A stretch of 63,324 bases of DNA, counting the filler, from Octopus bimaculoides (Eukaryota), in assembly GCF_001194135.2 (NCBI RefSeq). It is 11 parts of 8 records of this genome, joined end to end, with 100 filler letters (N's around TTAATTAATTAA, not from the genome) between each part and the next. Parts side by side here need not be neighbours in the genome. Positions count along the whole stretch, not along the records: positions 30,512 to 35,274 come from NC_068985.1; 10 more parts are not named here. One strand, written 5' to 3'. Positions within the stretch are counted from its first letter, which is position 1. Each line of letters starts with the position of its first letter. A program made the translations under genes and the position numbers. Shown here piece by piece: positions 30,512 to 35,465 of the stretch. The notes under the pieces are model-generated. The model saw nothing but the letters and a program-made list of their open reading frames with translations. It searched no databases and was not told the DNA's origin.

Positions 30512-30647
30512 GGCGAGCTGGCAGAAACGGTAGCACGCCGGGCGAAATGCTTAGCGGCATTTCGTCTGTCTTTATGTTCTGAGTTCAAATTCCGCCGAGG
30601 TTGACTTTACCTTTCATCCTTTCGGGGTCGATAAATTAAATGCCAGT
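30512..30647 (+). mobile_element. SINE family B, 5' part
   Basis: GGCGAGCTGGCAGAAACGG head plus core; truncated by the Penelope-like segment. Confidence 0.85.
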
Positions 30648-30835
30648 CCTATATTCAAACGATGAGGAATTATGTACATTATTTACGTTATTTACATTTG
30701 ACGGATATTTGTCCTCATCTTGTTTGTTGTTAACACAATATTTCGGCTGATATACCCTCCAGCCTTCATCAGGTGTCTTGGGGAAATTTCGAACCTGGGT
30801 TCTCATTCCTAAGGTATTTTTCGATATAATTATTA
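30648..30835 (-). mobile_element. Penelope-like element terminal (pLTR) fragment
   Basis: Minus strand CTGATGAAGGCTGG..CAGCCGAAA motif, typical of Penelope termini. No coding sequence is adjacent. Confidence 0.6.
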
Positions 30836-30869
30836 TTATGACCTGAATAATAATAATAATAATAATAAT

Positions 30870-31489
30870 AAAATTTTGGGGGAGGGTGCCAGTCAATTAA
30901 ATCGACCCCAGTATGTAACTGGTACTTAGTTTATCAACCCCGAAAGGATGAAAGTCAAAGTCAACCACGGTAGAATTTGAACTCAGAACATAAAGACAGA
31001 CGAAATACCGCTGAGTATTTCGCCCGGTGTGCTAACGTTTCTGCCAGCTCGCCGCCTTAAAATTTTTTTTTTCTACTTAAGGAACAAGGCCCGAAATTTT
31101 TTTAGGGGAGGTGGAGCAGTCGATTAGATCACCTTCAGTACGCAACTAGTACTTAATTTATCGACCCCGAAAGAGTGAAAGCAAAGTCGACCTCGGTGGA
31201 ATTGAACTCAGAACATAAAGACACGAAATACCGTTAAACATTTCGCCCGGTGTCCTAACGTTTCTTATTTCTTTATTGCCCACAAAGGTCTAAACATACA
31301 AGGGACAAACAAGGACAGACAAAGGGATTAAGTCGATTATATCAACCCCAGTGCGTAACTTCTACCTAATTTATCGACCCCGAAAGGATGAAAGGCAAAG
31401 TCGACCTCGGCGGAATTTGAACTCGGAACGTAACTGCAAATGAAATTCCGATAAGCATTTCGCCAAGTGTGCTAACGTTTCTGCCAGCT
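30870..31489 (-). mobile_element. Three head-to-tail family-B SINEs
   Basis: Copies at ~30870-31057 (tail X), ~31065-31262 (tail X) and ~31262-31489 (tail Y). Confidence 0.85.
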
Positions 31490-31543
31490 TAGAATTTGTT
31501 ACTATTGCACCGTAGTAAACCTAGATCGGAAAAAAAGAAATAA

Positions 31544-31799
31544 GGTAGAAGTTACGCACTGGGGCTGATATAATCGACTTAATCCCTTTGTCTGTCCTTG
31601 TTTGTCCCTTGTATGTTTAGACCTTTGTGGGCAATAAAGAAATAAGAAACGTTAGGACACCGGGCGAAATGCTTATCGGAATTTCATTTGCAGTTACGTT
31701 CCGAGTTCAAATTCCGCCGAGGTCGACTTTGCCTTTCATCCTTTCGGGGTCGATAAATTAGGTAGAAGTTACGCACTGGGGTTGATATAATCGACTTAA
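31544..31799 (+). repeat. Inverted, circularly permuted duplicate of 31239-31455
   Basis: 31544-31671 = rc(31239-31366) with 1 mismatch; 31672-31799 = rc(31328-31455) exactly. Confidence 0.92.
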
Positions 31800-31939
31800 G
31801 GATGGCTATGGTTGGAACGCCTTTGATCATGTTTGTTTGGTAATACTACCGCCATTACTTCCAGGACCACTTTGTGGTCCTCGTACCACTTAGAAAAATA
31901 AAAATTAACTATATCTCTCCCGGACTATAAACTATCATC

Positions 31940-32015
<76 letters not shown>

Positions 32016-32650
32016 NNNNNNNNNNACACACACACGCGCGCACTCTCTCGCGCTCTCTCTCGTATGTGTGTGTGTCTGTGAGTATTAAATATATATGCAT
32101 GCATGTGTGTATATGTATAAGTGTACAATGAAAAAGGTTTAGAATGTATTCAAAGTTTTGTGTTACTTATCATTAGACAGCTGCTTACTTCGGTATATCA
32201 AGTATTATATAAATAGTTTTATGCGTAAAGGGAATCACCTAGTAGGTCGAAGGGGATATATGCAAATTAGGTAGAGTGTCAACGAGTTTGTGAGAATGAG
32301 ATGTGGTTGTATAAGAAGGGGTTGGAATTATCGCTTCACCTAACAAATGCATGGCCCAAATAAACTCTCCCTCCCTCTCCCAACCTCTCTCTCTCTTTTT
32401 CCCTCCATCCATCTGCGACTTCTCTCTCCCCTCCCTCTTTCTCTTATATACATATATACACATATACACATATATTTATTTCTTTGTTGCTCACAGGGGC
32501 TAAACAGAGGGGACAAACAAGGACAGACAAAGCGATTAAGTCGATTACATCGACCCTAGTGCGTAACTGGTTCTTATTTAATCGACCCTGAAAGCATGAA
32601 AGTCAAAGTCGACCTCGATGAAATATACATACATACATGCATACATACAT

Positions 32651-32681
<31 letters not shown>

Positions 32682-33539
32682 CATACATACATACATACAT
32701 ATATTTCAGTCATTAGACTGAGGCCGTGCTGGGGCATTGCCTTGAAAAATCTTAGTCGAACGAATAAATCCTAGTATTTATGTTTTTAAAGCTTGGCACT
32801 TATTCTATCGAAATGTTTTGTTGGCCTTCTAAGTTACGGGGACATAGACATATCAGCACCGGTTGTCAAGCCATGGTGGCAGACAAACATAGACACATAG
32901 ACAGTAAAACAGACACACACACACACGCACACATACACACACACACATACGCATGCGTGTGCGCACACACACACTTCTGAAGCTCGTTCTGGCAAAAGGT
33001 TCTGTAATGAAGACGAATTGGCCATGGCTGGAATGTCTTTGACCATTTGTCTGTTAGGTCTGACCTTAACCAATATCAACAATCACAACAGCGATATTAT
33101 CAATATTTCTTTGATGATGCATGCGCTTGTTTTTCTATTCTCTTTTGTTAATTTATTTATTTATTTATTTATTTATCTATTTTAGAGAGTAGCGAAGAGT
33201 GATGGATATTTGATGGTTAATTTTACAAGGTCAAGTGATCAAAACACACTCAACTAGTCTTTCAATTATTCCATTTTTAAAGATTAATTAATCATTTGAT
33301 GTTTGTCACAAGAGTTGCCCTATTGGGAAAGGTGTGATGAGAAAAAGAAAAAGGCATAATAGTTGTAATTCTTTTCAAAAAATGAAAATGTTTTTAGACC
33401 TTGTCCAACATCATAGCGAAGCAAAATGAATGATATGGCTGCTAATTCTTTGTTATCTTATTCAGAAACTTTTAAAGTGTCAGAAAAAGAATGCTTCGCA
33501 GTAATTCTTCCGGATTTTAACGTTGTGAGTTCCTGTCCT

Positions 33540-34110
33540 CTGACCTAATAATTGCTCTGTCTTGATACAAAGAGGCTAAACAGGGGCACATAAGGGAAAT
33601 TCAGTCAATACCTGTCAAATATTGGGAAATATCTAAGCAGGTTTACGAGATTTTTGAACCGTCTTCTACGCGCTAGCCCTACAGAATTGTTTTGAGAATC
33701 TAAAATACAGTTCTAGTTTCCCACTTGTAGAAGTGATCGGGACGTTCCCAGGAATGCTTCCAGACGTCTGAAAAACTCTGGCTGTTCTACTCCTGTTGGG
33801 GCATAGACGGCCACTACTGGTCTAAAAGCACTGCCTTCGCTGCCGGTCACATCCAAAACCATTGACTTATGGTCAGGTCCATGAATATTGCCTATATTGT
33901 GAGATCGAAGGATTTGGGGAATAATAATACAACCACATCATCCGATACCTATAGACTACGAGATGAGAATATTTCATTGTCATCAAAAATAGGTCCAAGT
34001 ACGTGCGTTCGAGAGAACCCAATCTCGCTGCTGATTTTTATATGTATATCTAGGGTCCGTGTTTCCATGCTGAACCCAAGTTGCACACATTTGAACATAC
34101 GACATTGTGA
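33540..34110 (-). mobile_element. L1/Tx1-clade LINE AP-endonuclease remnant
   Basis: THVLGPIFDDNEIFSS, frameshift, MVLDVTGSEGSAFRPVVAVYAPTGVEQPEFFRRLEAFLGTSRSLLQVGN*NCILD (VYAP and GDxN-like motifs). May extend to ~34450. Confidence 0.78.
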
Positions 34111-35465
34111 ATAGCAATGTCTATTGGAGAAAATAAAATGGGAGTGGTCAACCACCTTGGTCCTCGAGACAGTAGATTGATCTGGTCTCCTTGTTGATTA
34201 AGAAGGATGTTTTGAAAGACCTTTGTGAGGTATTTCTAATGGGCATTTTTCTAAAAAGTCCAGCCTCAAAGGAAAACTTTTCCTTCAACATCTCTGTCAG
34301 TTTATGATAAAAATCTGTCCATAGGAGTTTTAGGGAAGAACCCTTCAAAGTCCTCTCTATTAGTGGCAATATTATTACCGTTTCTGTAAATTCAATATTG
34401 TTTATTTGTATAACAATGAAGTTAAGGAAGTTGCCTTCCGGCTTATCTTGCCTGTTTGTCTTGTCTGGTCATTTTAAAGGGATTGCGGTTGCACTTCTGG
34501 CTGAGAGTTTCGTTTAAATTGTTATCGTTCTGGTTGCAGTTTAAGCCCGTTCGAATAAGTACTAGGCTTACAAAGAATAAGTCCTGGGGTCGATTTGCTA
34601 GACTAAAGGCGGTGCTCCAGCATGGCCGCAGTCAAATGACTGAAACAAATAAATGAATAAAATAATATGATAAAGAGACTGAAAAATTTGAACAGTCAAA
34701 CTTTATGCTTATTTCGAGTTAGCTTCTTCATAATACTTGTCCGATAAGTATTTCTATCGCACTAACTGAATACATGCAACAATATGCAGTTAATGCGATA
34801 GAAACACGTGACGGACAGTCATTATGAATAAACTAACTAGAAATTAACAATTCTTCATTCTCCTTATTGTCAATATTGTAATTTACACTCTAAGTAGCCA
34901 AGAAATAAACTATATATATTATATGTTTGGGTGGTGTGAACATGTAAACGATTTTGTATACGTGTATCTGTAAGCTGCTTATTTCTGAGTGTCAGAAGTC
35001 TGTGTGGTAAGTTGGCATACGTGGACATTTGCGTGTGCATATATATATATATCTACACACAGCTGAGTATGTATTAAATTATGAGTACTAGTGTACTCAT
35101 AGTATGTTAACAATGGAATTGTGTGTGAATGCGCATATACACCTCTGTATGTGTGTGTATATCCATATATCTGTATGGTAATCTATATGTGCTAGTGAGC
35201 TTTCATGTGTTGTAATGTGTAACCCTTAACGTGTATGTGTGTGTTTGTGTGTGTATATATATATATATATATATNNNNNNNNNNNNNNNNNNNNNNNNNN
35301 NNNNNNNNNNNNNNNNNNTTAATTAATTAANNNNNNNNNNNNNNNNNNNNNNNNNNNNNNNNNNNNNNNNNNNNACAACAACAACAACAATAACAACAAT
35401 AATCATAATGGCTTTTGATTTTAGCACGTTATTTTATCGACCTCGGTGCAGTTTGACCTCAGAGT

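What the first reader, a model, noticed from the sequence alone, without database searches (positions are those of the whole stretch)
31239..31799. Inverted, circularly permuted 1.18-turn copy of a 217-bp SINE-SINE junction: footprint of a small DNA circle or double template switch
Seen: 31544-31671 is the reverse complement of 31239-31366 (1 mismatch) and 31672-31799 is the reverse complement of 31328-31455 (exact). The two pieces are joined at CATTTCGCC, a 9-bp identity shared by the heads of two tandem SINEs at 31239 and 31456, which are exactly 217 bp apart. The insert begins and ends with the same 39-mer (31544 and 31761, again 217 bp apart) and carries the private mutations of the neighbouring copies (AACTTCTACCTA, ACTGCAAATGAAATTCCGATAAG). 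Inference: recombination between the tandem heads made a 217-bp circle that was copied for more than one turn and inserted inverted ~90 bp away, or MMBIR/FoSTeS switching gave the same result. This would be a DNA-level route for reshuffling SINEs (tail-first permuted units) and would create a ~250-bp near-perfect dsRNA.
Basis: partly seen in the sequence, partly recalled or inferred. Interest (0 to 1): 0.75.

Follow-up and report, generated by a model that had tools for sequence, protein, structure and literature searches.

The report
Inverted local copy of two SINEs
A 256-base stretch is a near-perfect backwards copy of two neighbouring short interspersed repeats lying 88 bases away, most likely made when a DNA polymerase jumped between nearby templates; this kind of mutation is known, and I could not check the raw reads.

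Summary
31544-31671 is the reverse complement of 31239-31366 with one mismatch (31565). 31672-31799 is the exact reverse complement of 31328-31455. The two pieces meet inside a 9-base identity (CATTTCGCC at 31239 and 31456, 217 bases apart). The other repeat copies in the piece are only 60-90% alike, so this is a local DNA-level copy, not a new retrotransposition. The "128 + 128" split is an arbitrary cut inside ambiguous junctions; only 256, 217 and 39 are fixed.

All three junctions carry microhomology: AGG at entry (7 of 8), 9 bases inside 84%-alike repeat heads, and TAA at exit. The copy is inverted and 88 bases from its source. Its left edge sits at the end of a 28-base tail-like remnant that already formed an imperfect inverted repeat with the source.

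This fits one fold-back or template-switch synthesis event with an extra 217-base slip between the tandem heads. A free 217-base circle gives the same product but does not explain the proximity or orientation. RNA folding gives one helix of about 150 base pairs, not 250.

It is a tidy example of a known class.

The parts
30512..30660 (+). Repeat copy S0 (forward; its 5' end is cut by the edge of the piece). With copy A it forms an older inverted pair: 136 nt, 90% complementary.
   Evidence: I4, D6; alignment.
30862..31058 (-). Repeat copy A. It has a full head (GGCGGCGAGCTGGCAGAAACG...) and an (AAT)n tail.
31076..31264 (-). Repeat copy B. Its head lacks about the first 14-20 nt and abuts the tail of C with no spacer. 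Its A-rich tail abuts the head of A.
   Evidence: alignment; sequence.
31265..31489 (-). Repeat copy C, with a different tail type (...GGGCAATAAAGAAATAA). The same tail type is seen at 32476-32624.
   Evidence: (D3, D15).
31239..31455 (+). The 217-bp source unit: the distal part of B's head, C's tail, and C's body up to C's head. Sub-segments are a = 31239-31327, b = 31328-31366 and c = 31367-31455.
31239..31247 (+). CATTTCGCC in the head of B, the first copy of the 9-bp identity.
31456..31464 (+). CATTTCGCC in the head of C, the second copy, 217 bp from the first. It lies inside the head homeology 31223-31265 / 31440-31482 (36 of 43 identical).
   Evidence: (D8).
31456..31543 (.). 88-bp spacer between source and copy: C's head followed by non-repeat DNA.
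31516..31543 (+). Remnant F, which resembles the last 28 nt of the C-type tail (21 of 28; the last 10 nt, AAAGAAATAA, are exact). It forms an imperfect inverted repeat with 31265-31292 and ends exactly at the left junction.
   Evidence: D13; score 14 vs shuffles 8.1 +/- 1.2, 0 of 1000 reaching it.
31544..31671 (+). Copy segment 1, the reverse complement of 31239-31366 (b' a'): mid-body to tail end of C, then the distal head of B. There is one mismatch, at 31565.
31663..31671 (+). Middle junction J2: GGCGAAATG, the 9 bases where both registers match. B-type markers lie to its left (GGACACCGGG) and C-type markers to its right (CTTATCGGAATTTCATTTGCAG).
31672..31799 (+). Copy segment 2, the exact reverse complement of 31328-31455 (c' b').
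31541..31545 (+). TAAGG at the left edge. It is repeated at 31797-31801, exactly 256 bp away. This reflects overlapping entry (AGG) and exit (TAA) microhomologies. It can equally be read as a clean insertion of 31544-31799 at ...GAAATAA^GGATGG...
   Evidence: junction views; sequence.
31797..31801 (+). TAAGG at the right edge. Template identity ends at 31799.

Best explanation
One replication- or repair-associated template-switch event made the copy. This could be fold-back (snap-back) priming at a break or a strand switch at a stalled fork, in the manner of MMBIR/FoSTeS.

A growing 3' end stopped at ...GAAATAA(GG), at the end of a short tail-like remnant that already formed an imperfect inverted repeat with the tail of element C. 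It re-annealed about 175 bases upstream on the complementary sequence (AAATAAGG against AAATTAGG) and copied backwards from 31366 to 31239, through the C-tail/B-head junction. It then came loose inside the head of B and re-annealed on the 84%-alike head of C, 217 bases away, with its last 9 bases perfectly paired. From there it copied 31455 back to 31328, so 39 bases were copied twice. Finally it rejoined the original duplex at TAA/GG.

Shown: the anatomy, the three junctions and their microhomologies. Inferred: the single-event order, the enzyme, and break versus fork.

The result is a 128-155-bp near-perfect inverted repeat with a loop of 160-220 nt. It could form a hairpin in DNA or in any transcript that spans it.
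For: Identity is 255/256, and the copy shares the unique tail-to-head junction and private variants of its neighbours. The orientation is inverted and the distance is only 88 bp.

Entry microhomology is AGG exact, 7 of 8 with the flank. The middle seam is 9 exact bases inside a head homeology of 36 of 43. Exit microhomology is TAA. No base at any junction is left unexplained.

The left flank 31516-31543 resembles the C-type tail end and stops exactly at the junction (0 of 1000 shuffles reach the score). This gives a pre-existing quasi-palindrome of the kind that nucleates such switches.

The right flank has no similarity to the repeat, so gene conversion between two old inverted copies is excluded.

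The single difference at 31565 is present in one 39-mer but not in the other or in the source. This argues that the copy has sequence of its own rather than re-used source reads.

Precedents exist. Template-switch events of type 3-2-1-4 create inverted repeats (PMC5453318). Yeast fold-back inversions of 2 to about 150 bp are primed at imperfect 10-nt inverted microhomology with a 41-nt loop, and the other end is captured with 0-5 nt of microhomology (PMC11724301). MMBIR allows repeated switching (PMC2621351, listed).
Against: No read-level or second-assembly support could be obtained. At 256 bp with three switches, the event is longer and more complex than most documented short-range events. 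The perfect 10-11-nt match between the left flank (AAAGAAATAAG, 31534-31544) and the C-tail/B-head junction was available, yet it was not the priming site used. The single-event order cannot be told apart from multi-step histories on sequence alone.
Confidence: 0.5

Rival explanations
1. A multi-step history. A 217-bp tandem duplication first arose at the source by unequal exchange or slippage between the two heads. A simple two-switch inverted duplication then copied a contiguous 256 bp of it. The source duplication was later lost, or it is still present but collapsed in the assembly.
For: The copy is exactly a contiguous window of (a b c)(a b c). Head-to-head homeology of 36 of 43 with a 9-bp and an 11-bp identical block makes such duplications and their loss easy. 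Collapse of perfect tandem duplications is a common assembly error (general knowledge). The piece comes from a scaffolded assembly with a 10-N gap at 32017-32026.
Against: It needs two or three events where one suffices. No trace of a second unit remains in the source. The near-identity (1 difference in 256) leaves little time for successive events.
Confidence: 0.17
2. An artefact. The block comes from chimeric molecules or a gap-filling step, for example strand-displacement amplification chimeras or a mis-closed gap, and is not in the animal's genome.
For: No independent support was obtainable. Amplification chimeras are mostly inverted, local, and joined at 2-21 nt of complementarity (PMC1855051), which is the same signature. 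The region is dense in repeats and the assembly has gaps.
Against: Three new junctions with only 3, 9 and 3 bases of overlap cannot arise from graph or overlap mis-joins; each needs supporting reads. Missed-adapter palindromes have no spacer and no register shift, whereas here the spacer is 88 bp. The private base at 31565 suggests separate reads. Whole-genome amplification is unusual for a large animal genome (general knowledge). The '128 + 128' hint disappears once junction ambiguity is considered.
Confidence: 0.2
3. Recombination or microhomology joining at the two CATTTCGCC sites released a 217-bp circle. The circle was copied for 1.18 turns by rolling-circle synthesis, and the product was inserted nearby.
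For: The middle seam is exactly what a circle junction would be. The copy is longer than one period. Direct repeats flank the unit, and 217 bp is within the size range reported for small circular DNAs (reviews PMC9527254 and PMC8414719).
Against: The final sequence is identical to that of the slip model, so nothing specifically supports a circle. A free circle has no reason to land 88 bp from its origin or to be inverted. The source unit is still in place. No circle data exist.
Confidence: 0.06
4. An RNA-mediated origin. A read-through transcript running from C into B was reverse-transcribed, the enzyme jumped at the 9-base identity, and the cDNA was inserted with a 5-bp target duplication (TAAGG).
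For: The copy is in the sense orientation of C and B. TAAGG flanks it as a direct repeat. Reverse transcriptases do switch templates at short homologies (general knowledge).
Against: Both ends lie in mid-body (31544 and 31799), not at the tail that the partner LINE would recognise. There is no A-rich or microsatellite 3' end. A retro-insertion landing 88 bp from its own source gene is very improbable. TAAGG is fully explained by overlapping microhomologies.
Confidence: 0.04

Closest known systems
Short-range replication template-switch mutations (Ripley quasi-palindrome model; four-point model of Loytynoja and Goldman, event type 3-2-1-4; PMC5453318)
   Same: [quoted passage not shown] In the maximal-template reading the order of switch points is 3-2-1-4. 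A pre-existing imperfect inverted repeat sits at the departure point.
   Different: That model allows one excursion with a contiguous copied fragment, usually tens of bases. Here the fragment is 256-257 bases and contains an extra 217-base register shift. The authors state that they do not model multiple successive switches.
Fold-back (snap-back) templated inversions at double-strand breaks (yeast, Pol delta plus end joining; PMC11724301)
   Same: A 3' end folds back on an imperfect inverted microhomology with a loop of tens of bases, is extended, unwinds, and is captured by the other end with 0-5 bases of microhomology. Here the match is 7 of 8, the loop is 165 nt, and the exit is 0-3 bases. 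The event can be read as a clean insertion at ...GAAATAA^GGATGG...
   Different: The reported sizes are 2 to about 150 bp, mostly under 14 bp. Here the size is 256 bp with a second annealing step. Neither a break nor the enzyme can be shown here.
FoSTeS / MMBIR complex rearrangements (PMC2621351)
   Same: There are several template switches in one event, microhomology at each junction, nearby templates, and mixed orientation.
   Different: These were described mainly at kilobase-to-megabase scale in human copy-number variants. Here the whole event fits within 600 bp, and one 'switch' is a homeology-guided slip between tandem repeat heads.
Small circular DNA (microDNA/eccDNA) with rolling-circle amplification and reintegration, as proposed for tandem repeats (reviews PMC9527254, PMC8414719)
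   Same: The unit size is about 200 bp. Short direct repeats lie at the unit ends. The product is permuted and longer than one unit.
   Different: There is no evidence of a circle. The proximity and inversion are not predicted. The source is not deleted.
Multiple-displacement-amplification chimeras (PMC1855051)
   Same: They are inverted, local, and joined at 2-21 nt of complementarity.
   Different: Those are in-vitro artefacts present in single molecules. An assembly consensus would need them to outnumber true reads. Typical chimeras have one junction, not three.

Membership tests
Short-range template-switch mutation (four-point model) | The new sequence is the reverse complement of nearby sequence on the same molecule. 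| tested here: met
   255/256 identity to the reverse complement of 31239-31455. The source is 88 bp away.
Short-range template-switch mutation (four-point model) | A single excursion: the copied fragment is contiguous in the template (two switches only). | tested here: not met
   two registers 217 bp apart are needed, so a third switch or slip is required, unless the source once held two tandem units.
Short-range template-switch mutation (four-point model) | The return point does not precede the departure point (order 3-2-1-4). | tested here: met
   in the maximal-template reading (31543-31799 copied), departure is after ...GAAATA and return is at GGATGG, skipping one A.
Short-range template-switch mutation (four-point model) | An ancestral allele without the block exists in a relative or another individual. 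| not testable with these tools
   No other genome or reads were reachable.
MMBIR / FoSTeS-type complex event | There are two or more template switches, with microhomology at every junction. | tested here: met
   AGG (7 of 8), GGCGAAATG (9, inside 36 of 43), and TAA.
MMBIR / FoSTeS-type complex event | All junctions arose in one event. | not testable with these tools
   This needs pedigree or population data. The single mismatch in 256 only says the copy is young.
Circle-derived (eccDNA, rolling-circle) insertion | The permuted copy is longer than one unit, and its seam lies at the direct repeats that bound the unit. | tested here: met
   256/217 = 1.18 units, with the seam in CATTTCGCC. The slip model predicts the same.
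Circle-derived (eccDNA, rolling-circle) insertion | A physical circle, or other dispersed copies of the same permuted unit, can be found. | not testable with these tools
   The 43-mer across the tail-to-head junction has 0 hits in the two collections available. These collections do not contain this genome.
Ordinary SINE retro-insertion | The copy ends at the element's 3' tail and starts at or downstream of its head, as one colinear element. | tested here: not met
   the block starts in mid-body, runs through a tail into a head, and ends in mid-body at 31799.
Ordinary SINE retro-insertion | The copy is flanked by a target-site duplication. | tested here: inconclusive
   TAAGG is repeated at both edges, but it is equally explained by overlapping 3-nt microhomologies.
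tRNA-derived SINE (for the underlying repeats) | The head is recognisably tRNA-like. | tested here: not met
   ARAGORN found 0 genes. There is no tRNA hit in Rfam at E <= 1. A B-box-like GAGTTCAAATTCC is seen by eye only. Multi-copy status and a shared core support 'SINE-like', not the tRNA origin.
Assembly or library artefact | The junction overlaps are long enough for a graph or overlap mis-join, or the form is a zero-spacer palindrome. | tested here: not met
   The overlaps are 3, 9 and 3 bases and the spacer is 88 bp.
Assembly or library artefact | No independent read spans the structure. | not testable with these tools

The most novel reading that the evidence does not exclude
A 217-bp circle (or looped-out unit) excised between the two tandem repeat heads really was the template. 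It was copied for more than one turn and captured at a nearby break. This would be a DNA-level route by which short interspersed repeats are permuted and seeded as tandem or inverted arrays. It would also be a rare case of a small circle leaving a germline footprint.
Probability: 0.06. Interest if true: 0.65.

Novelty: new member of a known kind. Interest (0 to 1): 0.3.

Why it matters
If the structure is real, it is an unusually legible footprint. Every base of a 256-bp insertion can be assigned to a template, so the polymerase can be followed through three switches, one of them a slip between tandem repeat heads. It shows how a repeat-dense genome can turn diverged repeats (80-90% alike) into a nearly perfect 130-155-bp inverted repeat in one step. 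Such a structure is a potential hairpin in DNA, meaning a fragile or recombinogenic site. It is also a long double-stranded RNA if transcribed, which would be a substrate for editing or small-RNA pathways (inference, not tested). It also shows that permuted 'tail-first' repeat units need not mean a new mobile element. The class of event is already well described, so the value is as a worked example rather than a new principle.

Tried and rejected
I did not try to get round this.

Exact-protein look-ups for two open reading frames that cross the junctions and two from unique flank found nothing on record.

A homology search with the 44-residue frame across the tail-to-head junction and the seam found no candidate. 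The protein collection evidently lacks this genome's repeat frames, so I did not spend the other two searches.

The 43-mer across the junction had 0 hits in metagenome and prokaryote genome contigs.

The core 25-mer gave more than 120 metagenome contigs, but they share only a 40-55-nt core. They are of no use for this locus.

ARAGORN and Rfam gave no tRNA or other real RNA family. All Rfam hits lie on microsatellites.

A literal search of papers for the core sequence returned only one unrelated plant paper.

Gene conversion between two old inverted repeats was rejected. The right flank has no repeat similarity, and the copied block includes an idiosyncratic junction.

I tried to define the empty site from a paralogue of the right flank. 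31803-31841 resembles 33018-33059 (score 21.5 vs 9.1 +/- 1.3), but the similarity starts only after the junction, so it does not span the site.

'128 + 128 suggests an artefact' was rejected, because the split depends on where one cuts inside ambiguous junctions.

My impression that this is cephalopod DNA is from memory only and was not tested.

Full report
WHAT IS THERE. The piece (30512-35274) is AT-rich (about 38% G+C) and full of microsatellites and short interspersed repeats. One repeat family occurs six times.

- S0 runs forward from 30512.
- A (30862-31058), B (31076-31264) and C (31265-31489) lie head-to-tail on the minus strand.
- A truncated copy lies at 32476-32624.
- The sixth is the block under study.

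The copies are 60-90% alike. A and B share one tail type, and C and the 32476 copy share another (...GGGCAATAAAGAAATAA). B lacks about the first 14-20 bases of its head and abuts C's tail with no spacer, which gives the idiosyncratic junction AATAAAGAAATAAG-AAACGTTAGG. No tRNA-like structure was detected, so 'SINE' rests on copy number, architecture and a conserved core, not on a demonstrated tRNA origin.

THE OBSERVATION. One search confirms every coordinate. 31544-31671 is the reverse complement of 31239-31366 with one mismatch (31565, C for T). 31672-31799 is the exact reverse complement of 31328-31455. CATTTCGCC stands at 31239 and 31456, and the block begins and ends with the same 39-mer apart from that one base.

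Name the source segments a (31239-31327), b (31328-31366) and c (31367-31455). The layout is then a b c, an 88-bp spacer, then b' a' c' b'. That is a 256-bp window (1.18 periods) of the inverted 217-bp periodic sequence.

The marker words and the tail-to-head junction occur only in the source and the block. The alignment shows B-type bases left of the seam and C-type bases right of it. At 255/256 identity against 60-90% for other copies, this is a recent local DNA copy.

The first register matches over 31543-31671 and the second over 31663-31799. The '128 + 128' symmetry is therefore a choice of cut, not a property of the sequence.

THE JUNCTIONS.

- Entry: the flank ...AAGAAATAAGG lies against the template ...GATAAATTAGG. 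AGG is exact, and 7 of the last 8 bases match.
- Seam: GGCGAAATG, 9 exact bases, lies inside the head homeology of B and C (36 of 43).
- Exit: the template ...GACTTAA is followed by the flank GGATGG, and TAA is shared with the pre-insertion sequence.

The entry and exit microhomologies overlap on the ancestral TAAGG, which is why TAAGG appears at both edges 256 bp apart. The event can equally be written as a clean insertion of 31544-31799 at ...GAAATAA^GGATGG... No base is left unexplained.

The 28 bases left of the block (31516-31543) resemble the end of the C-type tail. The match is 21 of 28 with the last 10 exact, and the score is 14 against 8.1 +/- 1.2 for shuffles, with 0 of 1000 reaching it. 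Before the event there was therefore already an imperfect inverted repeat between 31265-31292 and 31516-31543. The block starts exactly where that repeat ends.

This is the classic setting for quasi-palindrome template switching, and it offers a reason for the departure point: a stall at the base of a hairpin. That reading is inference. One oddity remains. The perfect 10-11-base match to the C-tail/B-head junction was not the priming site used.

MECHANISM. The inverted orientation, the 88-bp distance, the microhomology at all three junctions and the pre-existing quasi-palindrome fit a single fold-back or strand-switch synthesis. A 3' end leaves its template and primes about 175 bases upstream on complementary sequence. 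It copies down to B's head and slips to C's homeologous head 217 bases away. It copies on for 128 bases and then returns.

Each step has precedent.

- Type 3-2-1-4 template switches create inverted repeats (PMC5453318).
- Yeast fold-back inversions of 2 to about 150 bp are primed at imperfect inverted microhomology across a 41-nt loop and captured with 0-5 bases of microhomology (PMC11724301).
- MMBIR allows repeated rounds of switching (PMC2621351, listed).

What is unusual here is the length and the extra slip, not the principle.

RIVALS.

(1) A tandem duplication of the 217-bp unit came first, followed by a plain inverted duplication, followed by loss or assembly collapse of the duplication. 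This gives the same sequence with more steps. Only read depth or other alleles can separate it from the single-event model.

(2) Artefact. Strand-displacement chimeras have the same signature (PMC1855051). Against this, three junctions with overlaps of 3-9 bases cannot come from mis-assembly without chimeric reads. The 88-bp spacer is unlike missed-adapter palindromes. The private base at 31565 points to separate reads.

(3) A free 217-bp circle copied by rolling circle. The product is identical, but the model does not predict the proximity or the inversion.

(4) Reverse transcription with a template jump. Both ends lie in mid-body with no tail at the 3' end, and the insertion sits next to its own source, so this is unlikely.

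(5) Gene conversion between old inverted copies is excluded. The right flank has no repeat similarity, and the block carries a unique junction.

CONSEQUENCE. Folded as RNA, 31200-31830 gives -342 kcal/mol against -155 +/- 7 for shuffles (z = -28). The fold has one long helix pairing 31328-31482 with 31645-31799, about 150 bp. Whether the locus is transcribed is unknown.

LIMITS. Every other route to independent sequence of this locus came back empty. So the structure's existence in the organism, its allele state and its age remain untested. I put about 0.7 on the structure being real in some form and 0.5 on the single-event template-switch account specifically.

VERDICT. The event belongs to a known class of mutation and is a clear, fully decodable example of it. 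Interest is modest.

Noticed in passing
window 31355-31410 (also 30600-30640 and 31715-31770); loci L001-L120: A 40-55-nt core of these repeats (...ATTTATCGACCCCGAAAGGATGAAAGGC...) recurs at 88-97% identity in more than 120 JGI metagenome contigs. Those contigs share neither the heads nor the tails. This looks like a conserved central domain of a SINE superfamily shared with a different host animal. I could not name the superfamily.
   Followed up: partly
window 30862-31489 (minus strand): Three repeats, C, B and A, lie head-to-tail with almost no spacer. C's tail runs straight into a 5'-truncated B head, and B's A-rich tail lies 4-9 bases from A's complete head. This could be one chimeric retro-insertion made by reverse-transcriptase jumps from RNA to RNA, or repeated insertion at the same spot.
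   Followed up: no
window 34706-34849: An imperfect hairpin has 67-nt arms that are 79% complementary and a 10-nt loop. Its RNA fold is -51 kcal/mol against -23 +/- 3 for shuffles (z = -8.5). There is only a weak chance-level microRNA hit. It could be a small foldback element or an older template-switch product.
   Followed up: partly
window 32691-32870 and 34456-34658: A second repeat family (…CAGTCATTAGACTGAGGCCGTGCTGGGGCATTGCCTT…) is present as an inverted pair about 1.9 kb apart. The listed part is 53 nt, 79% complementary (I10).
   Followed up: no
window 31803-31841 and 33018-33059: The DNA just right of the block resembles a stretch 1.2 kb downstream (score 21.5 against 9.1 +/- 1.3 for shuffles). 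The insertion site may therefore lie at the edge of yet another repeat.
   Followed up: partly
window 31942-32045: A long (CA)n run is interrupted by a 10-N gap at 32017-32026, so the assembly is scaffolded or gap-containing close to the finding. All Rfam 'microRNA' hits in the piece lie on such microsatellites and are spurious.
   Followed up: no
window 30512-30647 and 30918-31053: The older inverted pair of repeats (S0 and A) is 136 nt long, 90% complementary, and 270 nt apart (I4). The locus therefore already carried a diverged hairpin-forming pair before the new event.
   Followed up: no
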